Shown: positions 36,557-52,990 of the stretch, in pieces
How positions within the stretch are numbered: position 1 is the first letter of the stretch
How the letters are laid out: each line of letters begins with the position of its first letter
Notes under the pieces: generated by a model
What the model was told of the DNA's origin: nothing
What the model saw: only the letters and a program-made list of their open reading frames with translations
The model's database searches: none
Origin: Paragordius varius
Taxonomy: Eukaryota; Animalia; Nematomorpha
Assembly (NCBI GenBank): GCA_964247055.1
Contig: OZ176052.1
Span: 682,001-746,000, forward strand
DNA: 64,000 nucleotides
Direction of reading: 5' to 3'
Made by a program: the position numbers and the translations under genes

Positions 36557-38781
36557 ATGTATAATTTTATGTAAAAATTTTGGGATAATTTATTAACTTT
36601 ATATTTATTTATTAAACATTATTTGAATGTAGAACTTTAAATAGCATTATTATTTATTAACTAAAGGATCAATTAATAAATCATTATACCAAATTATAAT
36701 CTATAGTTAGTTGTTTTAATTGTGTAACGAAATATTGGGTTTTTGGAGAAACTATAAAATATCTTTTACCAAAATATAATTACCATATACTTATTATACT
36801 GTAAGAACTTTATATAATTTCTTGTCTTCCAAGAACTGTTTGATAGCGCTTAAAATTAATCGCATACTATGGTAAGCAAAAATTTTGTTCAAATTTTATC
36901 AAAATTACTGAATATAATTTATTTTAACCATAATATATTAATGTTTTGTTGTTTGGCAATGTAACGTCTAACTGCTAAAATGAGAATTTATACAATTTGA
37001 TTTAATTTTTCTAAAGTAACAAAATATTTAATACATATAAAATGTGCTTAAATATCATAATATTTTTAAGCATTATTTTTATAATAGCTTTTTTGAGTTA
37101 CGACTTAGGCTATAATAATTTCTTGAAATTTTATACAAGGAAATGAGGGGTGACCCAAACAATATGGCGAATGAGCCCGATCCAATAGCTAAAATAATTA
37201 ATATTAAATTGCTAAAATATTCTATGGCTCAAAGTTGAGATTGGAAACATTTGAGTTTGATGCAAGAAAATTTGAAAACCTTAATCAAAAAAAGAAAGAA
37301 AATGTGAGCTAATTAAATAGTCTTATTCACACGTCTTATTTATTTAACATGGCCCAACGACCCCATTTATAGTATGGCACTCAGTACATCTAATCCAAAC
37401 TGGCCAAAATTCGACAACTTTAATAAACTAATCCATAATTTTTTCAAAAAAAAACAGACACCTTCCAGAAATAAATAATAACTTGAATCCAGGTTCTTGC
37501 CTCTAAATGATTCTCTATAAGCCATAGCAAATTCTTGATTACTTAAAATACAACTTTCCTCTAAAATATTCCCCGTGTATTCAAAGCATATGACTAGCTC
37601 TAACAATCGTATACAGGTGTTAAGCATTGAATTTTATTCTAACATCAAAACCATTGTGAATTTATTATAGGCAAATAAATAACTATTATTAATCAAATGC
37701 AATTATTTACCATTTTTCAATCGATTTCCCGTTTTTAAATCATTCCTTTGTTTAAGTTTTAATAAAAATTCTAACTCTCACACTTTATTAAAAACTATGT
37801 AGTATACTTTTGATTCAGCTATGTTTTAAACCCACTCCGGTCTCTAATGCGTTAATTAGCCCTATTGGTACTATAATGTGGACCAAATCAATTTTTGATT
37901 AGACATCTGTAAATACCATATTTTCAGGATAAGTATATTCAACACTATGTAATTAAGATTTCCCAATAGGGAAGTTTGGATGTGCTAAAAATACTTAAAG
38001 AATTCGAAATAGTTAAATTTATAATAGTCTAAAAATTAAGCTAGTCTTATTTGTCAGCCTGATACTTCTAATATTTGGGGATTTAAAACAAATATTTTTG
38101 AAACTCTTGTTAATCACCAATAATGATGTAGATGTATAAATAAATTTTTTTATCAAACATTGAAACAAAACTTTTCAAAATAATTCCTAATAAAAATCTA
38201 ACATTTTTTTTCAGTTCGATGATATAACCTTATATACGCTCAATCTTACATTTTTGATTGGACTTATAAAATTAGGGTTAATATCTATAATTTAATCTAT
38301 TTAATAAAAATAATAAAAATTTTCTTTGACTAATTAGTTTGTGGATATGTGTGCAAGTTTTGTCTGGTTTCATAGGAAAATGTTTGATCTTTACTTTTTA
38401 TTATTATCGTGATATTTTTTTATATTATCATGAAATGTAATAAATCTTCTCTTGGTTAACCAAAAATTTGTTCTATCCTTAATAATTTATGTAATTTGAA
38501 AGGTGGTTCAATCTCCATTTTTATAACATCTAATATTTAATTTTTTGTTCAAAATATTGGTTTTAATCTTTTTTTTGTGAATTTGTTAGAATGCGGTTGT
38601 CATTTTAGTTTTAGCGATATAAAAATACTTTCATTATTTCTATGAGCATTTCATAGTTGGTCCAAAATTTAAAGTTTTATAACTTTACGCTTTTTTGTAG
38701 ATTCATCGATTTTTTCGATTCTATAATAGAATATATCAAATTCTCTGTTGATACGTTTCCACCACTTTAAGTGTTATTCGC

Positions 38782-41700
38782 ATGAATAAACCTAATAGCC
38801 TTTACACGAAAAAAACTGTATTTTTCTTAACAATTTTTGCAACGAATTGTTTTGACCTTTGTCTCACTCATATAGCACATATATATCATTCCTTCAAACA
38901 AAAATTATTCACAATATATATCAGATCAAAATGTAGCGAGGACCCAAAGATCTTCAAAGTTAACCCAAAAATCGATGTTGACTACCGAAAAAATTTATTA
39001 AATTCAATATTGCAAAAATTAACGTTTGCAATTTTAGTTTTTTCCTTCTATAACTGCACAACAGTCTTGACTGAAGCTAAAATAGGCGGAAAAGGTAGTA
39101 CTAAAAATATATCAATAGACCCATTTCGGATTCTTATAGTAAATCTGGACGAAAAATTTGAAAAAAGTAATAATTTAACTTTTTTAACGGATAAAATTTG
39201 GGCAAATATGTTTTATCCCGATAAACTCCGTTCAAAAATCCCTCAAAATAATTTGAAGCAAATCCTAAATATTACAGCCCTTACATTAACTCAAATCGAA
39301 AATAAATATATGAATATGATTAGAAATATCGAGAAAACAAGAGTTGAAAAAAACATAAGCTATTTCCATCATTTTTTACGCTTACAATACCCTGAAAGGC
39401 GGCACATTATATTTTTCTTGTTAACACAATCGGATTTGACAAAAATTATTGAGCTGACACCATCATTATTCAATCAAGACAAAAATGATAAAAATGAAAA
39501 TTTTCTTGATGATACAATAAAAGTTGCAAAGAATTTTCATGTAAATTGGAATTTCATACCAGAAGGCACAGTGTCGAAAAATATAAACTATTTGGCCAGC
39601 TTGCGGAATAACACTATTGCTCCTTCATGGTCGTCGTTAAAAATCAATAATAACCAACAAATTAATCATAAACATAATGGCAAAAATAAAAAATCTTTAT
39701 TGACAGTAAAGACATCAATTTTACATTACTTAGCAGAGCAAAATTTATATAAGCTTGATAGGAGGGATAATTATTCCATGAATGAAATTGTTAGTAATAT
39801 AAGTGATATGCCACCTCTCAATATTATCATACCATTAATTCATAATGATGAGATTGATGATAACTTATTTGCTAACAATAAATATTGGAAACAACCAAGT
39901 TTAACACATGGCAAAAATTTCAAGCAACATAATAAAAAGGTAATTATGAAAAATTTCAAAGATTTTTGCAAATTAGTGTGTTATATTTGTGTTATATATC
40001 ATTTTTTCAGTGAGAGCATACAATTTTAAACTTATTCACTAGTTAGGGGGGGGGGGGCTGATTAGAAGTAATTTTTGACGGCTTAGCCAGTTAATTTAAG
40101 AATCAAGATTTCAGACAAAAATTTTGTACCACAAAATATTTTTTTATAGCTAATATAATTAATAAAATATAATAACCTATTTTATCATAATTATATTTTT
40201 TTCGAATAATAGTTCCAACCAAAAACCAAAATCTTTAATGGCGATGCCCAAACTCGTGCTAAGTACTGCAGCAATACTCTTATTATAAATGGCAATGTAA
40301 GGGATTCAATGGAAAGATTTGCCCCGAACAACCTTGAAATGGACCTGATGGTAAAACTTATCAAAAGATTTAATTGGAAAAGTGTCATCCTTGTCGTTAG
40401 CGATAATCTCCAAGGTAGCAAAATAATGCAAATGTTTAGAGAATCCGTTCAACACACAAATATTCAAGTAAAATGATAACCACATTTCATATCTTTTGTA
40501 TATAATATCATTGATTAATTCCGAGATTATATGGATGAAATACTAATTGGGTATTTTAGGCAATTTACAAATGTACCATAACAAATTTTAAAAAAGTAAA
40601 ATCAATTATATATATATATATATAAGGCTATATTGTAAATTCATTAGTAAATGCCATCCATCATTTATGATAAACGGATGTTTCAAACATTATTGTAAAT
40701 AATGAAATTTTTTAAAGTAAAATGTTTTATTTATCTCTGTCATATGTAGATTAGCGTATAAAACTTACTATCGTTAAACCTTAAAGGATTACAAAATAAT
40801 TGATTCCCAAACTTACTTTGTCTAATCTCTTTATTTGTTCTCTATGCCAGCATTTTGTAGCCCGCCTGTATCAATTCTTAATCCCAAATAATCATACACT
40901 GGAAATTGCAAACTGACTTTAATTACAACTTTTTAGCAGCGTAAATCCTTTATGTTTTACTTTTGATACTAGGAAAAAGTAAGTTAACGGTATATTCTTC
41001 AAAATTTTGCCCATTAACTGAATATTTCAGGTGTGCTTCTATATGTTAGTCCTTATCGAATATATTCATATGAGCATATTTTGTGGCAAGACGCCCAGTG
41101 TCTTTATCATATATAATAGGCTACCAGAATTTTTCCGAATTTCTCTGTCATTGACATACTATAACTATATGTCGTCAACACGGAGTTTAGCGTTTTTTAC
41201 TTACACATACATGCATATAATACGCATTAGCCCAAATAATGTTTTTCTAAATTACTTAACTATGTAAAAATCTCTCCTAAAGTCGATAATCAGATCTTGG
41301 ATATTTTTTTCTTATTATAGCGTGGTGTTGCATCTGAATCGATTCGAAGCTGAATAAGGTTTTTGATATAAATTGGAATAGCGTATATACACTTTGATGT
41401 TTCAAAAATTGACATCTTTTACCAGTTAATCCCCATGTCAAACTTGGTCGTACAAATAGTGGACTAGGGTTAGCATTCAAAACTTAATAACTTTTGCTTT
41501 GTGTCAGAACACCCAAAAATGTTCACTAATCAAACGCTTCGTTGAAAATAAAAACAAGATCTTTCTTTACCTTAAGTTATTAGAGGAATCTTCGTTTTCT
41601 AATATCTAGCACGAAAGTTGCTGAAATAGCTTGACACGCTTTAAATGTGCCCAGTCCTTATTCCTACATTCGTTATTTGAGTGATTTTCGCAGCGGCTAT

Positions 41701-44700
41701 ATTTATATATTGTTAAATTATTATCGGTCGCATTCATGTTTCTTTTGGGGTTTTGTCAAATTAGTTTACCCATATTCCTTATAGATGCTTAATTCAATGT
41801 AAGTGTTAATTTGTTTAATTTATATAAATTTAGATTATTTAAAAATCCCAAATTATTTTACTTATGTGATAAATGTTTTTTTTAATGTTAATCTTTACCT
41901 GAAATATGGGAAAATACCGATTTAATAAGGTAAAAATTTATTTAAGTCATAAAGATTGAACCGATATATTAAATTTTTTAAAAAATGCTCAAACACAACT
42001 TAATTTGTTTGGATGGATTAGATAGAAGATGTATTACAAATCCCTATCCTAAATCCTAAGCCTTTAAATCCACAATCCGATTTTATCAGCTTAAATGGAC
42101 AAAAATTATCTCAGATTCATGGCAGACATAGTCGCATACTAGTTATTTGTCTCAAGTATTTATTAATATATTGATATTAAATCAGATAACTATAAATCTA
42201 TTTAAAGAATAGCAAAATATTAAGAAAAAGTAAGTTAAACACCGTGCTTTTTAGGACTTATCTAAGATCAATATGATCAATTTATTTGCTTTTATAATTT
42301 TAACATTAGTGATAGATTTCTAATATATATACCTGAAAAACTATACCCAAAATATTTTAAAATCGCGCCTTAGAAACATGGCCGAAACAAATGCTTTTTC
42401 CACCATTTTATCAACGTATGAAAGTGCAAAACGGGACCATTTTATTTGGCTTCTAGGCAGTCAATCCACTCTTGTGCAAGATACCGACTCTAATTTAAAC
42501 AGCAATAATTATGAAATTCATCCAATTAAACCTGCCCGATTGGATAGAAACGGATATTTACTGGTAAAACCCCAACAAAAACAACCGTTAGACTATTGCG
42601 CTCAAGTCATATCAAACATTTTATCTAAAATATTATCGAATCTAAATTCCCAATTTAATGAACACGAATCGTATATGCATTGGATAAGAAGGTAAGATTT
42701 CAAAAACACGTAAGAAAAATAAGAATCGTAATTGTGACCGTTTTAAAAATAACCGAATCATATTGTGTGTCCATATGTTAAAATATTAATTATCATTCCC
42801 TGGCAAAATATATTATTTTCTCGTTAATTTCATCTTTTAGCGATCAATAATAATTAAAAAATAGTAAAATAGATATTATTCAAACATACTTATCACATTA
42901 AATATCTTCTCATATAGCACAAAATTAAAAGTTTAGTATGCAACGGTATCATAAGCATATAAAAAGATATTTACTAAACAAACAAGCTCATTCCAATTAA
43001 TTTGTAATATAATAACCGGTCAAAAATTATTAAAACAATTTGTTTTGTCATCCATTTAATATATCGATACTCTTTTTGATTTTATATAATATTTGTATAT
43101 CGCCGATAAAAATTGGAATATTTTATCATGCTCCCCCTCCCTCCCCCTAGACAAATTCATAAATTGTTTGATGAAACGAATGGCGAGATGGTTTCAAGTT
43201 ACGATTATGATATTTGGAACCAACAAACAGATGACATAAAACTTGTTGGAACATATAGTAAAGTAAAATAAATTGTTTTATTCAAAACAAAAGTTACAGT
43301 TTAAAATTTCTTTGTTAAGATGCATATAATAATTATTAAGGGTTCAAAAAAACTTCAGCATTAAAATAAATACAATGTTTGTTAAAATTTATTTAAGTTA
43401 TCATATATTCTTACACCTACCCTGCCCACAAAAATAGAGAAATGTAATAGTACAATATAAAATGGAATTATACGGACAACGTAAAAATTAAAGATAAATA
43501 TTATTTTCTAAAAGACAACCATACTTTTTTTAAACCTTAACTTTCCTATATAAGCGACTTAATTATAATTGTAATCTATAGTTTGATTGTATTACCAATT
43601 TACATCTCAATTACACACACTTTGTCATTTCAAATAATGAGTTATATTTTAAAATGGTTTTCTTTTGGAAAAAAATATTTGTCTTTATATTTTTAATAAG
43701 TTTTATCCGTATAATTCCAATTTTTACTGTGTTTCCGTAGTTTATATAACCTTAATTTTTGTTAATCATCATCATGATTAGAATAACCTAAAAGAAGATG
43801 GCATAGAACAACGCTTGACCATCAATGAAAGTTTAATTCAATGGCCTGATTCCGGGACAGATGGAAATCCAATTCCAAAAGGCTTCTCTCTTCCCATGCA
43901 TTTAAAGGTATTTCATTTTATCGGGGGAAAAATTTATATTATATATAATATTTATAATAGTAAAAACTGATATTATATAGACAAAACGTAAAATATAAAT
44001 ATTTTTTAGAAAACAACCATATCTTTTTTAAACCTTAATTTTTCATACATATAAATTATCAAATTACGAATACATAATTGATTGTGTCACCAATATACAT
44101 TTCTTTTTCATACTTTAAATTTAAAACGATGAGTTATATATATTAAAAAATCAAATTTGAAAAGGTACAGCGGTTGAAAAAAATTTGTACTTATATTTGT
44201 ACGTTTTGTCCGTAGTATTTGTTTTTTTACTGCATATAAATTTGTGATATTGTTTTACAGTTCAAATTCCCCCTTAAATAAATTATATGTTTTCGAACTA
44301 ATATAACTCATTATTAATATGAAATATATCTTTATGGCATAATTTATTATTTTTTCGGTATTATTTTATTTTAAAACAAAAAATTTTATTTTTTAGAAAT
44401 ATATAAAAATATAGGTAATTTATGATCTTACAAAACATATATTATTTTTTGAGGGTGAATTTCAATTATTCGAGGGTCAATTTGAATTTTAAATGGTATA
44501 TTATTGTTTTACAGGTAATTACGTTTGTGGAAACGCCTTTTGTCTATTCAATTCCTATGCAACAACTTAACGCAAAAGCTTACGGGGGGAAGAAAAGAAG
44601 AAAGAAAGATACAGCAAATCCACCAATTATCTATTTAAACATTCAACAGCAGGTGGGACAAAATTCAAGTTTGTTTGATTTGCACGAAAAATATGGCTAT

Positions 44701-47700
44701 AATACAATTATGCACTTACAGCCTGGTAGAAATGGTGAGTTAGATTCAAACGCAATTTGTCAAAAGGAGGGTGGTCTAACCTGTACCATTTCAAATCATT
44801 ATGGTAATATTTGAGATATTTTAGCCAAGTTATATGCTAACTAATGATTTATTTACGGGTTTACTCATTGAGAGTCGATGAAAATGTTAATTATCCTGAT
44901 TTTATGCTAAATTACACCCAATAAATTTTTCTTATAAATAAATTTATATTTGTTAAAATGTTATTTTAATGGATTATTTGCATCACACTTAATTTTTATA
45001 ATTTTTTGATTTATAATAATGTAACTCATGCATGACTGGACATTTACAGTACAATTGAAATTATACGGACAAAAAGTAAAAATATAAAGGCAAATTATCT
45101 TTTCTAAAAGACAACCAACCATACTTTGAAAACCTTAATTATTTCAAATATAACTCATTGTTTTAAACTGTAAGCTATAGAATAGAGACGTATATTGGTA
45201 ACACAATCATTGATAAATTTTAAGATTTTTATTGAATGGTTTAAATAAGATATGTTAAGGTTTGAAAAAGAATGGTTGTTGTCTTTTGGAAAAAAATTCT
45301 TTATATTTTTACGTTTTGTCCGTTTAATATCAATATTTACTGTAACCGATTATAGTCTGAAAAGAAGCATTTTTATCTCAGTTAAAAATGACCACCTTTG
45401 ACCAAGGTAAACTCTTAAGTAGAAACTGCTTATTTTATAATTATTATTATATACCTCAGATTATGTGGATGAAATCCATTGCTGTTTTGGCTTCTGTATG
45501 GATTTACTACGTGAATTGGCTCAAAAATTACATTTTACTTTCACGTTGTCTCTTCTGAACCAACAAAATACACCTTATGCCGTAAAAATTTTTAAATCTC
45601 ATTCTCTTGGAATTTATATTTAAAGATAAATATTTTGCTTACATTAAATTTAGTATCAAGCCCAACAAAAGCAACGTGCAGCGATAAATGCGATTTTAGC
45701 CGGGCAAGCTGATATGATAATTGCTCCACTCATTATAACGGCTGAACGAACAAAAATTTTGGAGTTTTCACAACCGTATCGATACCAGGGCATTTCTATT
45801 TTACAAAAACGAGTAGTACTTAACATAGTATTTCGAGTTTCATTAGTATCTTAATCATAGAATAATACTCCATATTAAGTTATTCAGTTTTTGATTGGCT
45901 ATAATCTTAAAATATTTTAATGAATATATCACTGTAAAGTCCTAGATTTTATGATTGCCCATATGAAAATTGTTAAAATTGTCCACTATGTCTCCATTAT
46001 TACCATCAGCTCTGGGCAGGTTAGATATTATAAAGTATTCATAGATCATATATCTAAATAGATCATACCCTTTTCTAACGAAAAGGGAAAAATGACTTTT
46101 TACTGTAAATTTAAGGTCTAAATTATACAGGGGATGTTCCATTTCAAATTATCATATACCTAATAAATTTAATCTATGATTTCTCAACTAAAAAATCATA
46201 GCACACCACAAAATCAAATCTCCATTCATTTCTTCAACCGTTTCACACCAATCTATGGCTAACGATTTTTGGGGCTGTCAATTTTGTTGGATTTCTTATT
46301 TTCTGGCTTGACAGGGTAAGTCCAATCGGAGGACATCATTTGGCACAGGTGACAGAACAGTTAACGCAAACCCGGAGGGATAAATTGTTGAAACGATATA
46401 GTGAGAGGTAGGTATTATTTACTAGTTTTTGGATTTTATCTTATAAAACTTTTTTCCATTTTAAAAATAATTTAATAATTAAACTTTTACGATGGTGAAC
46501 ATAAAGTTTTTTGTCAAATGGATTAAGAATTGCATGCACATATCTTACACCTCAAATAAAAGAAATAAAAATAACAGTAATGGTGATATTTTACCTGTTA
46601 TAAATATAATTATAAAAATGAATTCAATATATCATACATATTCACTTTCAGCGAAAACATTGTCAAAGAATCTAGGAGGAACAGTAAAAATGCTCAAACG
46701 TGTTCGAATAACTTTGTAACCAGCTCAGATTTAGCCGTTCAAGAAATAATTGTGTCAAGCACTGCTGCAGAAAATGATAAGAATAATCACATACTACATT
46801 TACCGAAAGCTCTTTGGTTTGCTTGGGGTATCCTACTAAATACGGGAATCGGTGAAGGTTTTTAAATGTTTTACTGTTGAATTTATGTTAGTTAATTGAA
46901 CTTACAGTAAAATCTGGAATTATACGGATAAAACGTTAAAACATCATGACAAATATTTTTTAAACGGTATATTTTTTAAATTTGATTTGACTCACTGTCT
47001 AAACTACAAAGTATTAAATAAAGATGTGAATAGGTAACACAATCAATTATATATTTTACAAAATTATATATTTTATATAAGAAATATTAAGGATCAAAGT
47101 ATGGTAGGCTGTCTTTTGAAAAAAAGATTTGTGTTTATTATTTATATTTATATGCATAATTTCAATTTTTGGTATATATTAAAAAATTTGTTAATTTATA
47201 TAATTTGGCAATAAAAACTATAAACATAGGGACTCCCAAAAGTTTTAGCGCTCGAGTAATGAGTATGTTTTGGTCAGGATTCACAATGATAATCGCCACC
47301 TCGTATACGGCTAACCTTGCTGCCTTCCTAGTTTTGGATCGTCCGGAATTAATTATAACAGAAATAAATGATCCCAGGGTACGCATTTTTACCATATATA
47401 AAATTTTGGTGACCCATTTGTACTTTTTTGGAAGAGATGCAATTTATATACATTTTGAATTTGAATATTTTTGAGACTTAAACGCCATATGACGAAATGA
47501 TACAAAATTAAATGAACCCAACAGCTGATAATTTGTGTTTTAGCCATGACTTTAAAATTTGGATAGGTAAAAAAAGAGCAACTCAAAAATTTTATTTTAA
47601 AGCTTTAAAATAAAAACGTTTTGCTGATTTTGACACAAGTTGGATTTTCATTATTTGACATATAACATTTATATGTAAAAGATATATATTGGTGTAATGT

Positions 47701-50083
47701 AATTTTGAATTTAACTTGTATAAGAAGTTTTTGGCAATCCTTTCCTACTTTAATAAAAATGTTTTTGTTGATTTATAATTAAACAGCTCAAAAATCCTAA
47801 TGAGAATTTTAGCTTAGCAACTATAAAAGGATCTGACGTGGATCTTTTTTTCCGACGTCAAGTTGATCTCGTCAATGTTTATCGGAAAATGCAACAGAGT
47901 AAAACGTATTACAGTGTAGCTCAAGCTATTGATGACATACATAAAGGGTATTTTTAATTTGATTTATTAGACTTTCGATTTGAGCAAAAAATTGATTTTA
48001 ATAATGTTTAGAGGTGTTTTTAGTTGGCTCAAAATCTAAATTAAAGCATTCCAACTATTTATTTATGTACATTTTAACAATAAATTTTATCAATTTTTTA
48101 ACCATTAATTTACTTTTTGTAAAATTTAATACCGTACCTCTGCATTCTAAAACAATGTTCCAGTCTTCTTTTTAATAATTATACAATCTCAATTTTGTAA
48201 TAAAGGATATTGAATGCTTTCGTTTGGGAACACTCTCGACTTCAATACGAAGCGGGACAGGATTGTAATGTTGTTTTGTCACCTCAACTGTTTGGTCTTT
48301 CGGGCTATGGCGTCGCAATGAGCAAAGGCAATCTCTGGCTTCCATTTATTTCAAATGCAATCCTGCGATTTCATGAAAGTATAGATTTAATCCAATTTTT
48401 TTTTATAAGTTCTATAATCTTTAAAAAATACATAAATTAGCTTTTAAACGCTAATTTTAAATAAATATAATAAGTTTCTTTGGAAAATATTTATTTATTG
48501 TTTTATACTAGCAGGAATAATGGAACGAATCGATACAAAATGGATTAGCAATAAATCCAACTTGGGAAGCGATTGTAAACCCAAAGAAAATCAACGAGCC
48601 ACTCTTGGAGTTTCTAACATGCTAAGTAATTTTTGTAAATAATCAAAATTTTATTGAAAACTAAACAATATTTTAAATTATTACAATGTTAAGTACTATA
48701 TTATTGGGGTTTTGCCCTATAGATTCATCATCGTCTGTACCCACTTTTAAAAATAACCGCTAAAAACTTAAAATTGTTACGTAATAAATACACATAAAAT
48801 GGTATGCCGTTAGTTTTTAGGGAAAAAAAGATTTATTCCCCTCTTATTAATATCGGTCGATTTGGGATTTTTATTTAACGATTTTGCTGCTCGCATATTG
48901 GTTCAAAAGCCAGCACCATATATATTATATTCTATCTAAATTTTTAAATTTAGTCATTTACAGTAAAATTGAAATTATACGGACAAAATGTAAAAATATA
49001 AAGACAAATTGTTTTTTCAAAAGACAGCCATATTTAACCATGATTTATCCTACAAAAAACATTTAATTACAATCGTAAAATACAAAATTGATTGTGTTAC
49101 CAATTTAAATTTCTATATTAACCTTCGTTTTTTAAAAAAACGAGTTATATATAATAAAATCAAGATTAAAAAAGTATGGTTGTCTTTTTGAAAAAAAAAT
49201 TTGTCTTTATATTTTCACGTTTTGTCCTATAATTTCAATTTTTACTGTGTGTATATATATTTTGTATGTATAGGTGTGTTTATTTTAATTTTTGGGGGTA
49301 TTGGCATCGGATACTTAATTTTAGTCGTGGAGTGGTTTTGGAAAAAACATAAATCTAACAAGAAACATCAAGAGCTCATTGCACATTCATACTTTGAGCG
49401 TTGGAAAGTTAAAACTTTCGTAAGTGTTTTAAAACGTAAAAATTCAGAAATTATAAAGACAAAACGCAAAAACTAAAAGACAAATTTTTTGTAGAAAAAT
49501 AGCCATGCTTTTTAAAACCTTGATATTTATTGTAATTGACACATGTGAAATTACAATTTCGGTTTGGCCAATTTATTTCTCTCTTCCTTATTTTTTTGCC
49601 ATAAATTATATATTAAATTAAAACAAGGGGATAAAATATATGGATGTTTTATTGATTTTTAGTTTGAATTTTGGCATAAATTTAATTTTTACCGCATTGA
49701 TACATTTATGAATATTTTATTTGCCTGTGTTTACTAAAATTATTAGCAAAAATTCAATTTGAGCCATAAAACTTTTCCATCTATTTTTTCGGTATTAACC
49801 CGAATCAAAGAAAATATTTTCAGATTTTGATAATTTTTTGGAATTTTTTTGAAAATTTGGATAATATAAGCGCTAGTATTAAATCACTAAGTTTTTTAAA
49901 TCAGATCGAATATAAAATCAATAATTCTATTTTGAATCCAGATATATATTTTTGAATGAATTTCATCATGTTAAAAATAATATCTTTTTTATTGTATAGA
50001 GAAATAAACATTTGCGTCAAACTATGGAATCAACATCAATCCAAATGAAACGGATAACTGGAAATAAATTCGATTATATATAA
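38782..50083 (+). CDS. Nmdar1: NMDA receptor subunit 1 (GluN1-type), divergent
   Basis: 17 exons: 38782-39939, 40213-40467, 42022-42155, 42374-42691, 43151-43262, 43782-43907, 44515-44803, 45460-45581, 45654-45812, 46202-46407, 46652-46857, 47230-47378, 47787-47947, 48206-48378, 48512-48625, 49274-49419, 50000-50083; [50 protein letters not shown]; about 1303 aa; start codon and 5' exons less certain. Confidence 0.9.
43453..43729. mobile_element. MITE family A
   Basis: aatggaattatacggacaac ... tccgtataattccaatttttactg. Confidence 0.8.
43957..44233. mobile_element. MITE family A
   Basis: agtaaaaactgatattatatagacaaaacg ... cgttttgtccgtagtatttgtttttttactg. Confidence 0.75.
44255..44496. mobile_element. 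Foldback MITE family B
   Basis: ttacagttcaaattccccc ... gggtcaatttgaattttaaatgg-TA. Confidence 0.8.
45047..45342. mobile_element. MITE family A
   Basis: TA-cagtacaattgaaattatacggacaaaa ... ttttgtccgtttaatatcaatatttactg-TA. Confidence 0.88.
46905..47170. mobile_element. MITE family A, degenerate right end
   Basis: TA-cagtaaaatctggaattatacggataaaacg. Confidence 0.7.
48961..49247. mobile_element. MITE family A
   Basis: TA-cagtaaaattgaaattatacggacaaaa ... ttttgtcctataatttcaatttttactg. Confidence 0.88.
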
Positions 50084-50689: not shown

Positions 50690-52990
50690 TCTGTTTCCGG
50701 CGGTAGACCCATTCAAATCCAAATATCGAAAAAATATAATCATAAATGAATGCCCCGACAATTGCTTCGCCTTTTTTTGATTTAGGCCCCCAGTTCGGGC
50801 CCACCAGTATCAAAGGGATCAAAGCAAGCGCTCTAGCCTATTTCTACAAGTAACTCTACGACACAAGGCCAGCCAAGACGATTGGCAACGCCTTCACCCC
50901 GGAAGAACTGCCGGAGCTAGACGGAGCACCCACAAAAGAAGAAATCAGGGCTTCTTTGGCTACTGTGCCAACAGGTAAGGCATGCGAACCTGACAATGTT
51001 CCGACTCTATAGGTAGGCTGGAGAAGGGTTAATAGGGGCTCTAAAGATGATTTTTTCGAAAGTGTGGGAGATCAGCCAGATTCCTCCAGCTTGAAAGGAG
51101 GCGAATGTTTGCGCATATACAAAGGAAAAGGAGTTGGAAAGGACCTAAAATCTTACCGACCCATATCCCTATTGAATATGGAGGGTAAAATTTTTGCGGG
51201 TGTAATCTACGATAGATTAAGGAAACTGGCCATGCTTGGGGATATCCAGTGTGGGTTTAGGAGAGAGAGGAGCACTATTGACCTTATCCACGTACTTAGA
51301 CGGCTTCAAGAGGAATGCAGAGTAACCAAGAGTGAGACGCATGCGCTATTCATCGACTTAGAGAAAGCTTTTGACAGCGTTCCACATACGATTATGCCTA
51401 ATAGTCTTTCCCAGACAGGCGAACAGACTAATGAGAGCAATAAGCGGCCTCACCATTGGGAACAAGGCGAGAGTTAAATCTGGGAATGTTCATCGGATTG
51501 GTTTTTGCTAAACAGGGGGGTCCGACAGGGCTGCAGAGTATCGCCACTTCTTTTTAATATCTTTTTAGAAGCGTGTCTGAGACAGACAAATATAAGTAAC
51601 TTTGTTAAAGGGGTTAAGTTAGGGCAAAGAGAGGGTAGTCTAATACAACTTATATCGACGCCTAAAAACGAGTGTTCTATTCACACACTCGCTTTTGCGG
51701 ACGACATAGTGATTTCAGATCATTCTCTCAGCCAAATCAAAGCAGCCCTGGTGGCACTTGAAAAGGTCTTTACCCAACAGGGAGTAAGAATATCGTAGGA
51801 AAAATCCAAGAACCTTGAATTGTCCGGTGTCAAAACGAGCAATAAAACGTTAACACTAGGCAATGGTAAAAGTGAATTTGTTAACTCATTCGTTTATCTA
51901 GGGTCTAAAATCAGCCATGCTGGGGGAGTTGGTGCCGAAGTTTCTAACCGTATACAAAAAGCGCGGGGGTTAGCCATAAAACTAAAACCGGTTCTTTCTT
52001 GTAAAAAGTTGGCAAACCCGATTAAAAAGAGACTGCTGATGAGTTATGTTGTGCCACCTCTGATGTACGGAGCTGAGACATGGAACACCACAGAACGCGA
52101 CGTTTCAAGAATAGACAGTTTTGCCAACAGATGAATCATATGTGAAAACGTTTTCCTTAAGGATCATAAAGCGATAGAGGATCTTGGAAAAAAATTAAAG
52201 TCCTTTATACAAACGAGATGTTTGTTACAAACGATTGAGCTGGGCTGGTCGACTATCTCAGAAACGCACATCAGGGTGGCATAGCACTCACTAGCTGCAC
52301 ATTGGGTAAGGGAAAGGCTAATGCCAGAGTTAGACAACGTTGGGATAACATAATCAAGGATTGGAACTGGCTTATCTATAATAGATCGGAAGGTGTGGTT
52401 ATATTCGGGGAAATGTCAGGAACTTAGTGATCTCCAGAAAGCTATCCAAACAGCCCCACCGATGAAACAAGTTTTCTTGCGACAGAAGGAGGCGAAGAGA
52501 AAAAGGGACCCAGATCCAATCCCCACAAATGTAAAGAGGATCAATGTTAGTGGGCCAGTTAAGTGCCAAGAAGGAACATGCCAAATAGTATTCTCTGATA
52601 ATAAAAATGGACACGTTTCTCTCTACCATAACTCAAACACCTCCCAAAGTCTAAACCCCCTTGCATGCAACATCATGGGGTGTGCAAAGGTATTTAAAAC
52701 TAAGGGCTGGCTTACCCGCCACCGAAAGGTGTGCCATGGAATGGTAACAACAGTCAGGCATCTGCCTATCCTTCTTCACCGAAGTCGATCACTATCTCAC
52801 ATCCAAAAACGGCATTATGGAAACTCCAATTTCTTGAAGGTGACAAATACTGTTGTCCTGTTACAAATTGCATCAGACAATTTGGCACCTACAAGGGATT
52901 GGAAAACCATGGTTACCGATTTCACCAAATCTCCATCAGAGCTATCAAAGGGGTGGTTGCGATACGGGCGGAGACGGCAACAGAATAAAA
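50690..52990 (+). mobile_element. 5'-truncated non-LTR retrotransposon (RTE-like): RT plus three C2H2 fingers, pseudogenised
   Basis: YRPISLL, QCGFRRERST, FIDLEKAFDSV, GVRQGCRVSPLLF, LAFADD, FVYLGS, LMYGAETW across stops and frameshifts; C-x4-C..H-x4-H motifs at 52560-52930; ends approximate. Confidence 0.92.

What the first reader, a model, noticed from the sequence alone, without database searches (positions are those of the whole stretch)
45654..48378. GluN1 with an intact pore but a remodelled glycine-binding pocket
Seen versus rat GluN1 numbering (alignment by eye): APLT->APLI (T518I), KQSSV->KGSDV (S688D), IWDS->VWEH (D732E, S733H), HQEP->VETP (Q405E), and loss of the DGKFG/EWNG motifs. 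R523, P516, W731, the N-site (LLNTG) and SYTANLAAF are kept. Established: T518, S688, D732 and R523 contact glycine. The codons (ATT, GAC, GAA) cannot be restored by A-to-I editing. Inference: the co-agonist may differ or be dispensable, giving an NMDA receptor with novel pharmacology.
Basis: partly seen in the sequence, partly recalled or inferred. Interest (0 to 1): 0.7.

Follow-up and report, generated by a model that had tools for sequence, protein, structure and literature searches.

The report
Hairworm GluN1 with altered glycine pocket
This is the single, intact and selectively maintained GluN1 (NMDA receptor) gene of a horsehair worm; its channel pore is normal, but several of the residues that hold the co-agonist glycine in other animals are replaced, so it probably no longer depends on glycine in the usual way.

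Summary
Exon-by-exon phmmer alignments to solved GluN1 structures confirm T518I, S688D, D732E and S733H. R523, P516, W731, the N-site Asn and SYTANLAAF are kept, and the DGKFG and EWNG motifs are absent.

The gene has at least 10 phase-consistent GT-AG exons across S1 to M4 with no stops. It is the only GluN1-type locus in the 110.5 Mb genome. Its closest relative is GluN1 of the hairworm Gordionus (68% identity; 38-47% to other GluN1).

Against Gordionus, synonymous sites are saturated (pS 0.83) while pN is 0.20, and 0-0.04 in the pore exons. It is therefore not a pseudogene.

In about 160 GluN1 sequences:
- Ile518 and His733 occur only here.
- Asp688 occurs only in the two hairworms.
- Glu732 also occurs in Lingula and Trichobilharzia.
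- Q405E is the protostome norm, and position 688 is usually Ala or Ser.

Published mutagenesis (D732E, T518L, F484A) predicts a very large loss of glycine potency. A sequence rule based on Arg523, an acidic 732, Ser687 and Val689 would still call the subunit glycine-type.

The same genome's only GluN2 lacks the agonist-clamping arginine. I saw this independently, and the scan had already noted it on other DNA (s1-253002).

Verdict: a new variant of a known kind. The altered pharmacology is plausible but untested.

The parts
40213..40473 (+). Amino-terminal domain exon (boundaries not fixed).
   Evidence: Pfam ANF_receptor, E 6e-8. Weak match to Gordionus GluN1 residues 203-277.
43782..43919 (+). 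End of the amino-terminal domain and linker to S1 (..[16 protein letters not shown]..). Boundaries not fixed.
   Evidence: tblastn with Gordionus GluN1 residues 309-341; open frame.
44515..44803 (+). S1a exon: [11 protein letters not shown] plus loop 1. Two phase-1 donors are possible, at 44735 (GTGAGT) and 44804 (GTAATA). The longer form keeps two loop-1 cysteines.
   Evidence: Sequence read; alignment. The choice of donor is an inference from the conserved cysteines.
45460..45581 (+). S1b exon: ..[27 protein letters not shown]. It carries the shortened lid loop without DGK[FY]G (the F484 region).
   Evidence: Lig_chan-Glu_bd; Gordionus genomic counterpart.
45654..45812 (+). S1c exon: ..[38 protein letters not shown]. 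Contains P516, Ile518 (45732-45734) and R523.
   Evidence: best PDB hits are GluN1, E 2e-10; Pfam PF10613, E 1e-10.
46202..46407 (+). M1 exon.
   Evidence: 65% identical to Gordionus.
46652..46857 (+). Exon for the M1-M2 loop and the M2 pore loop, with the N-site Asn ([14 protein letters not shown]).
   Evidence: 22 of 22 residues identical to Gordionus, with pS 0.76.
47230..47378 (+). M3 exon with SYTANLAAF and the GluN1-type M3-S2 linker.
   Evidence: Pfam Lig_chan; best hits in 1.84 billion proteins are GluN1; pN 0.04.
47787..47947 (+). S2a exon: [25 protein letters not shown]... Contains Ser687, Asp688 (47835-47837) and Val689.
   Evidence: all 60 PDB sequences shown (62 matched at E<0.01) are GluN1.
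48206..48378 (+). S2b exon: [20 protein letters not shown]... Contains W731, Glu732, His733 and C744.
   Evidence: best PDB hits are GluN1, E 1.4e-9.
48512..48625 (+). S2c exon: [22 protein letters not shown]. Contains C798.
   Evidence: 73% identical to Gordionus.
49274..49476 (+). M4 exon and start of the C-terminal tail. There is a possible donor at 49423; otherwise the frame stops at 49474-49476.
   Evidence: Gordionus has an intron at the matching place.

Best explanation
This is the single GluN1 orthologue of a horsehair worm (Nematomorpha). It is a working, selectively maintained NMDA-receptor subunit with a normal pore and a folded clamshell ligand-binding domain.

The hairworm lineage rebuilt the orthosteric site:
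- The aromatic lid (DGK[FY]G, F484) and W498 were lost.
- Position 688 at the top of helix F became Asp.
- Position 732 became Glu.
- This species then also replaced the otherwise invariant Thr518 by Ile and Ser733 by His.

Shown here: gene identity, intactness, single copy, purifying selection, and which substitutions are private, lineage-wide or common.

Inferred from published rat mutagenesis: classical high-affinity glycine/D-serine binding is lost or weakened by orders of magnitude. The subunit then acts as a largely ligand-independent, or very low-affinity, partner of the equally aberrant GluN2.

My own structural inference, not tested: the Asp688 carboxylate on the lower lobe lies where the agonist's alpha-carboxylate normally bridges to Arg523 on the upper lobe. 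It could pair with Arg523 as a built-in pseudo-ligand while Ile518 fills the glycine cavity. This would explain why Arg523 is still conserved.
For: Identity:
- Every ligand-binding exon has GluN1 chains as its best PDB hits.
- The M3 exon search of 1.84 billion proteins returns GluN1.
- All 120 listed hits of the Gordionus ligand-binding region that carry a name are named GluN1 or NMDA receptor subunit 1.
- Closest relative: Gordionus GluN1 at 68% identity, against 38-47% for other phyla.

Single copy: the genome has 7 iGluR loci and only one is GluN1-type.

Intact: 10 exons with GT-AG borders and matching phases, and no stops.

Selection against the Gordionus locus L002: pS 0.83 (saturated), pN 0.20 overall, 0 in M2, 0.04 in M3 and 0.20-0.21 in the S1c, S2a and S2b exons.

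Pocket survey of about 160 GluN1 sequences:
- Thr or Ser518 in every true GluN1 except this one.
- Asp688 only in the two hairworms.
- His733 only here.
- R523, P516, W731, S687 and V689 are kept.

Literature:
- D732E lowers glycine potency 1,000-10,000-fold, and D732L/F make GluN1 ligand-independent (10.1101/2023.08.03.551817).
- T518L, F484A and D732A each lower affinity about 100-fold, and F484A+T518L is insensitive to 30 mM glycine (PMC6707325).

Partner: the genome's GluN2-like gene has His in place of the agonist-binding Arg, and Gly-Ala in place of the pore Asn-Asn.
Against: - No functional or expression data. The small runs guessed to be RNA showed nothing on this stretch.
- Mutational effects measured in rat GluN1 need not transfer to a protein only about 45% identical.
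- Glu at the 732-equivalent is the normal state in AMPA and kainate receptors, which bind amino acids. It also occurs in Lingula and Trichobilharzia GluN1.
- Non-polar residues at the Thr518-equivalent occur in working ligand-gated iGluRs of other clades (PMC13648236).
- Arg523, an acidic 732, Ser687 and Val689 fit the published rule for a glycine-type subunit (PMC6307864).
- Asp688 could simply be an alternative N-cap of helix F.
- The Arg523-Asp688 bridge could not be examined, because the structure tools return no coordinates.
Confidence: 0.5

Rival explanations
1. It is still a glycine-type (or other small amino acid) co-agonist subunit. The changed residues compensate for one another: Glu732 acts as in AMPA and kainate receptors, backbone amides at 518 and 688 still hold the carboxylate, and one of the nearby Tyr residues in ..TPYAYQ.. 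replaces F484. Pharmacology would then be shifted in potency but not in kind.
For: - Arg523, the acidic 732, Ser687, Val689, W731 and P516 are conserved. This matches the published rule for amino-acid binding and glycine selectivity (PMC6307864).
- Position 688 tolerates Ala, Ser, Pro, Gly and Asn in other GluN1.
- Working iGluRs exist with non-polar residues at the Thr518-equivalent (PMC13648236).
- The ligand-binding exons remain under purifying selection.
Against: - Three changes that each cost 100-fold to 10,000-fold potency in rat GluN1 coincide here.
- A new negative charge sits next to the carboxylate site.
- No other GluN1 of about 160 has Ile518 or Asp688.
- The partner GluN2 has also lost its key arginine, which suggests a change of the whole receptor.
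Confidence: 0.3
2. The pocket has been retuned to a different ligand. The new acidic and imidazole groups (Asp688, Glu732, His733) might bind a cationic amine or a metal ion, with or without Arg523 holding a carboxylate.
For: - Two carboxylates, plus a His in this species, line the cleft.
- The domain is still under selection.
- iGluRs gated by GABA, aspartate, alanine and other ligands are documented in other clades (PMC13648236).
Against: - His733 is not shared with Gordionus, which has Ser, so a His-based site cannot be the lineage's solution.
- No candidate ligand is indicated by any data here.
- Ile518 shrinks the cavity rather than enlarging it.
Confidence: 0.12
3. The gene is decaying or non-functional: relaxed constraint in a parasite with a reduced nervous system.
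For: - Hairworm GluN1 sits on a long branch (45-51% identity, where other phyla share 55-72%).
- The amino-terminal domain is barely recognisable.
- No RNA evidence was obtained.
Against: - All exons are open, with canonical splice sites and matching phases.
- Synonymous sites are saturated while pN is 0.20 overall and 0-0.04 in the pore exons.
- Asp688, Glu732, Arg523 and W731 are conserved between two hairworms that differ at 32% of residues.
Confidence: 0.03

Closest known systems
Canonical GluN1 (rat, human or Xenopus GRIN1; Drosophila Nmdar1)
   Same: - Same domain order and same pore: N-site Asn and SYTANLAAF.
- GluN1-type M3-S2 linker and S2 signature (..ATxKGSxVDxxFRRQ..).
- The C744-C798 pair, and P516, R523, S687, V689 and W731.
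- A GluN2-type partner is present in the genome.
   Different: - Ile for Thr518, Asp for Ser/Ala688, Glu for Asp732 and His for Ser733.
- Lid loop without DGK[FY]G (F484), and no W498.
- A very divergent amino-terminal domain.
- Only 38-47% identity over S1 to M4.
Gordionus sp. m RMFG-2023 GluN1 (XP_065321168.1 / CAK9301985.1)
   Same: - 68% identical over S1 to M4.
- Shares Asp688, Glu732, the lost lid motif, the lost W498 and the N-site ..LLNTG..
- The M2 pore loop is identical.
- AT-rich locus (26.5% GC).
   Different: Gordionus keeps Thr518 and Ser733. This genome has Ile518 and His733.
Engineered rat GluN1 F484A+T518L and GluN1 D732 mutants
   Same: The natural protein combines a hydrophobic residue at 518, loss of the F484 lid and a changed 732. 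These are the changes used in the laboratory to abolish or bypass glycine binding.
   Different: - Ile rather than Leu at 518, and Glu rather than Ala, Leu or Phe at 732.
- An extra Asp688, in a very different sequence background.
- No functional data.
Trichoplax AKDF-19383 (constitutively active iGluR with Tyr at the D732 position) and cnidarian NMDA-like subunits with altered binding residues
   Same: Natural iGluRs in which changed orthosteric residues, conserved within a lineage, go with non-classical gating.
   Different: - They belong to other clades: a homomeric AKDF receptor, and non-GluN1/2/3 cnidarian NMDA-like subunits.
- Their residue changes are different.
- Here the subunit is a true GluN1 orthologue of a bilaterian.

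Membership tests
GluN1 orthology group (NMDA receptor subunit 1) | iGluR architecture: amino-terminal domain, S1, M1, M2 pore loop, M3, S2, M4. | tested here: met
   Pfam ANF_receptor, Lig_chan-Glu_bd and Lig_chan hits on the exons. Exon order established.
GluN1 orthology group (NMDA receptor subunit 1) | Closest to GluN1 rather than to GluN2, GluN3 or AMPA/kainate subunits. | tested here: met
   - Best PDB hits of the three ligand-binding exons are GluN1; for the S2a exon all 60 sequences shown (62 matched) are GluN1.
- Named hits are GluN1.
- No formal tree was built, because a joined model was not made.
GluN1 orthology group (NMDA receptor subunit 1) | Pore signature: N-site Asn in M2 and SYTANLAAF in M3. 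| tested here: met
   [12 protein letters not shown] and SYTANLAAF are present. Against Gordionus, pN is 0 in M2 and 0.04 in M3.
GluN1 orthology group (NMDA receptor subunit 1) | A GluN2-type partner gene in the same genome (obligate heteromer). | tested here: met
   G000:C4, about 6.4455-6.4479 Mb, minus strand (L001). Best PDB hits are GluN2A-D. Its own agonist-binding arginine is replaced by His.
Glycine-binding GluN1 (functional class) | Arg523 and an acidic residue at 732 to fix the amino-acid backbone. | tested here: met
   Arg523 is kept. Position 732 is Glu, which is acidic but not the Asp found in about 150 of the roughly 160 surveyed sequences.
Glycine-binding GluN1 (functional class) | Thr or Ser at 518 contacting the agonist. 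| tested here: not met
   Ile518. Thr or Ser is found in all true GluN1 surveyed.
Glycine-binding GluN1 (functional class) | Aromatic lid residue (F484 in DGK[FY]G). | tested here: not met
   The motif is absent from the S1b/S1c junction here and in Gordionus. Nearby Tyr residues might substitute for F484; this was not tested.
Glycine-binding GluN1 (functional class) | Helix-F motif Ser-(Ser/Ala)-Val, the selectivity signature of glycine-type subunits. | tested here: inconclusive
   Here the motif is Ser-Asp-Val. The first and third positions fit, and the middle position is Asp only in hairworms (PMC6307864; PMC13648236).
Glycine-binding GluN1 (functional class) | Channel opening requires glycine or D-serine. 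| not testable with these tools
   This needs electrophysiology or binding assays.

The most novel reading that the evidence does not exclude
Hairworm NMDA receptors have given up amino-acid agonist binding at both kinds of subunit. GluN1 would be self-liganded, with Asp688 pairing with Arg523 and Ile518 filling the glycine cavity. GluN2 lacks its clamping arginine. The conserved pore would then be opened constitutively or by a still unknown signal. This would be a bilaterian NMDA receptor that is neither glutamate-gated nor glycine-gated.
Probability: 0.2. Interest if true: 0.8.

Novelty: new variant of a known kind. Interest (0 to 1): 0.55.

Why it matters
GluN1 is among the most conserved neurotransmitter receptor subunits, and its glycine site is a drug target and a textbook example of co-agonism.

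This is a natural GluN1 that keeps a perfect pore under strong selection. It also combines the kinds of changes used in the laboratory to kill or bypass glycine binding, and it is paired with a GluN2 that has lost its arginine.

It therefore gives a ready-made test of three questions:
- How much of NMDA receptor gating really needs the orthosteric sites?
- Can a tethered carboxylate replace the agonist?
- How do receptor pairs co-evolve in a fast-evolving parasite lineage?

Position 688 and Q405 vary widely among invertebrates.

Tried and rejected
- RNA support. The run search found no holder on record as RNA. Three small runs guessed to be RNA laid nothing on 44400-49500, so expression and splicing are unconfirmed. 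The one DNA run from another study (X3) covers the Ile518 codon in a 289-base contig with 2 differences whose positions were not listed, so it is not independent proof.
- Word search with the S1c exon alone found nothing. The tool only sees proteins of similar length.
- The look-up of encoding contigs failed for the truncated Gordionus protein and worked for the longer model.
- The 425-residue open frame at 38752-40026 could not be tied to the gene. It has no Pfam hit and no similarity to the Gordionus N-terminus.
- Pseudogene reading: rejected.
- Second, canonical GluN1 paralogue: rejected.
- Apparent Leu518 and Gln523 outliers in the survey were misaligned N-terminal fragments or non-GluN1 proteins.
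- Loss of the loop-1 cysteines: an artefact of choosing the upstream donor. The downstream donor at 44804 keeps two cysteines.
- Structure prediction was not run, because the tool returns no coordinates and so could not test the Arg523-Asp688 idea.
All searches were exon by exon, by reference. Substitution counts were summed per exon without joining sequences. For the same reason no formal phylogeny of the window's protein was made.
Full report
**What is there.** The window is AT-rich animal DNA (about 25% GC). On the + strand, from about 40.2 kb to 49.5 kb, lies a multi-exon gene for an NMDA-receptor subunit.

I fixed the exon borders from S1 to M4 by reading the DNA:
- S1a 44515-44734, or 44515-44803 with the downstream donor
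- S1b 45460-45581
- S1c 45654-45812
- M1 46202-46407
- M2 46652-46857
- M3 47230-47378
- S2a 47787-47947
- S2b 48206-48378
- S2c 48512-48625
- M4 49274-49422 or beyond

All introns are GT-AG, all phases match and there is no stop. Upstream exons of the amino-terminal domain exist: Pfam ANF_receptor matches 40213-40473. Their borders and the first exon were not resolved.

Every search used single exons by reference.

**Check of the observation.** phmmer of the three ligand-binding exons against all PDB chains gives GluN1 as the best hits (E about 1e-9 to 1e-10).
- APLT becomes APLI (T518I).
- KQSSV becomes KGSDV (S688D).
- IWDS becomes VWEH (D732E, S733H).
- R523 is kept.

The lid region between S1b and S1c lacks DGK[FY]G and EWNG and is about four residues shorter. 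The N-site Asn and SYTANLAAF are present. The codons are ATT, GAC and GAA as stated.

**Whose gene it is.** A search with the M3 exon of 1.84 billion representative proteins returned GluN1 sequences. This big search was used because exon-sized queries cannot find full-length kin in the word search.

The closest hit, 95% identical over 40 residues, is annotated GluN1 of the horsehair worm Gordionus sp. m RMFG-2023. A longer Gordionus model of 823 residues and its genomic locus were fetched. That locus has 26.5% GC.

Summed over exons S1b to M4, the window is 68% identical to Gordionus. It is only 38-47% identical to GluN1 of vertebrates, arthropods, a brachiopod, rotifers, flatworms, a nematode and an acoel. 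Hairworm GluN1 sits on a long branch, since other phyla share 55-72% identity.

**Copy number and partner.** Six-frame searches of the whole 110.5 Mb assembly with Pfam PF10613 and PF00060, and with two of the window's exons, find seven iGluR loci. Only this one is GluN1-type. The GluN1-specific S2a exon matches nothing else even at E 10. So there is no canonical paralogue.

One other locus (G000:C4, about 6.4455-6.4479 Mb, minus strand) is GluN2-type. Its best PDB hits are GluN2A-D. In place of the arginine that binds the agonist's carboxylate it has His (..GLTITSQHSQTIDFSIPF..). Its pore loop reads ..FGAS.. where GluN2 has ..FNNS... I found this before seeing the scan's earlier finding s1-253002, which reports the same loss on that other piece of DNA.

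**Is it alive?** I compared the window's exons codon by codon with the Gordionus locus, using Nei-Gojobori counts summed per exon without joining.
- Synonymous differences are saturated (pS 0.83).
- Non-synonymous differences are pN 0.20 overall.
- pN is 0 in the M2 exon, 0.04 in M3 and 0.20-0.21 in the S1c, S2a and S2b exons.

This is strong purifying selection on the pore and clear constraint on the ligand-binding domain. The pseudogene reading is rejected. Expression could not be shown, because the few small runs guessed to be RNA hold nothing of the stretch.

**How unusual is each substitution?** I aligned the exons as fragments to a panel of 33 GluN1 sequences.
- Position 405 is Glu or Asp in most protostomes, so Q405E is ordinary.
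- Position 688 is Ala in 95, Ser in 54, and also Pro, Gly and Asn. Asp occurs only in Gordionus and this genome.
- Position 732 is Asp, except for Glu in the two hairworms, Lingula and Trichobilharzia.
- Position 518 is Thr or Ser in every true GluN1, including Gordionus. Ile is found only here.
- Position 733 is Ser everywhere. His is found only here.
- The aromatic lid residue is Phe or Tyr (aliphatic in flatworms) and W498 is nearly universal. Both hairworms have lost them.
- R523, P516, S687, V689, W731 and N616 are kept.

So the remodelling has two layers. An older hairworm-wide layer covers the lost lid, Asp688 and Glu732. A private layer covers Ile518 and His733.

**What this should do.**
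- In rat GluN1, D732E lowers glycine potency 1,000-10,000-fold. Leu or Phe at 732 make the subunit active without glycine (10.1101/2023.08.03.551817).
- F484A, T518L and D732A each lower affinity by about two orders of magnitude. F484A+T518L is insensitive to 30 mM glycine, and these mutants are also delivered less well to the cell surface (PMC6707325).
- Across 204 iGluRs, the Thr518 position is Thr or Ser in 76%, Arg523 is conserved in 97%, and the 732 position is acidic in 92%.

The hairworm protein thus combines natural counterparts of the very changes used to disable the glycine site. The most likely reading is that classical high-affinity glycine/D-serine dependence is lost or greatly weakened.

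**A mechanistic idea of my own.** This is an inference that could not be tested here. Asp688 lies at the top of helix F, where the agonist's carboxylate normally bridges the lower lobe to Arg523 on the upper lobe. A tethered carboxylate there could pair with Arg523 and hold the cleft shut, with Ile518 filling the cavity. This would explain why Arg523 is retained.

**Counter-arguments.**
- The published sequence rule (Arg485 plus an acidic 705 for backbone binding; Ser653 plus a non-polar 655 for glycine selectivity; PMC6307864) would still class this subunit as glycine-type.
- Glu at the 732-equivalent is normal in AMPA and kainate receptors.
- Working iGluRs with non-polar residues at the Thr518-equivalent exist, and mutational effects are hard to transfer between clades (PMC13648236).
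- Asp is also a common helix N-cap.

I therefore give about 0.5 to strong loss of glycine dependence, 0.3 to a compensated glycine-type site, about 0.1 to a new ligand and about 0.03 to decay.

**Comparison with what is known.** By descent this is a GluN1 orthologue. By function it fails two tested hallmarks of the glycine-binding class, Thr/Ser518 and the aromatic lid. I therefore file it as a GluN1 orthologue but not as a demonstrated glycine-binding GluN1.

I found no paper on hairworm iGluRs in the held library. The nearest precedents are the engineered rat mutants, the Trichoplax leak channel with Tyr at the 732 position, and cnidarian NMDA-like subunits with altered binding residues.

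**Verdict.** This is a new variant of a known kind. Together with the GluN2 finding it makes hairworm NMDA receptors a worthwhile target for expression studies.

Noticed in passing
G000:C4, about 6445500-6447900, minus strand (locus L001:7400-9900): The genome's only GluN2-type gene has His where all solved GluN2 have the agonist-binding Arg (..GLTITSQHSQTIDF..). It also has ..FGAS.. for the pore ..FNNS.., and ..MFSPSA.. where GluN2 has ..PNGSTE.. It keeps the Asp of ..FIYD.. The scan's earlier finding s1-253002 already covers this.
   Followed up: partly
window 38752-40026 (+): A 425-residue stop-free frame in 25% GC DNA, just upstream of the recognisable amino-terminal domain exons. It has no Pfam hit and no similarity to the Gordionus GluN1 N-terminus. 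It may be a very divergent first exon of this gene or something else.
   Followed up: partly
window 44913-45425, 46794-47135 and 48846-49358 (also 44400-44570): Stretches inside the GluN1 introns are laid at depths of hundreds to thousands by contigs of a whole-genome run, with many joints between them. They are high-copy, probably MITE-like, repeats.
   Followed up: no
window about 50700-52000 (+): Reverse-transcriptase-like open frames in a block of higher GC (38-39%, against 25% around it). This is probably a retrotransposon just downstream of the gene.
   Followed up: no
L002:15464-15541 (Gordionus locus, OX940786.2): The Gordionus genome encodes ..NCCYGYCIDLFQKLAAQLHF.., but the deposited 823-residue model skips most of it. 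The RefSeq model XP_065321168.1 is only the last 254 residues. Both public models of the Gordionus GluN1 are incomplete.
   Followed up: partly
Proteins P0141 (Lingula anatina) and P0181 (Trichobilharzia regenti): These GluN1 orthologues also carry Glu at position 732 (..FIWES..), while Schistosoma rodhaini has Asp. D732E has therefore arisen several times in GluN1.
   Followed up: partly
G000:C7, about 5644100-5645800, 5876100-5877850 and 6073100-6074900, minus strand: Three nearly identical AMPA/kainate-type iGluR loci lie within 430 kb, with the same Pfam scores and the same identity to the query. This looks like a recent segmental triplication.
   Followed up: no
window 44735 and 44804: Two phase-1 donors could end the S1a exon. 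The strong-looking GTGAGT at 44735 would remove both loop-1 cysteines, and GTAATA at 44804 keeps them. This is a possible alternative splice or a decoy site.
   Followed up: partly
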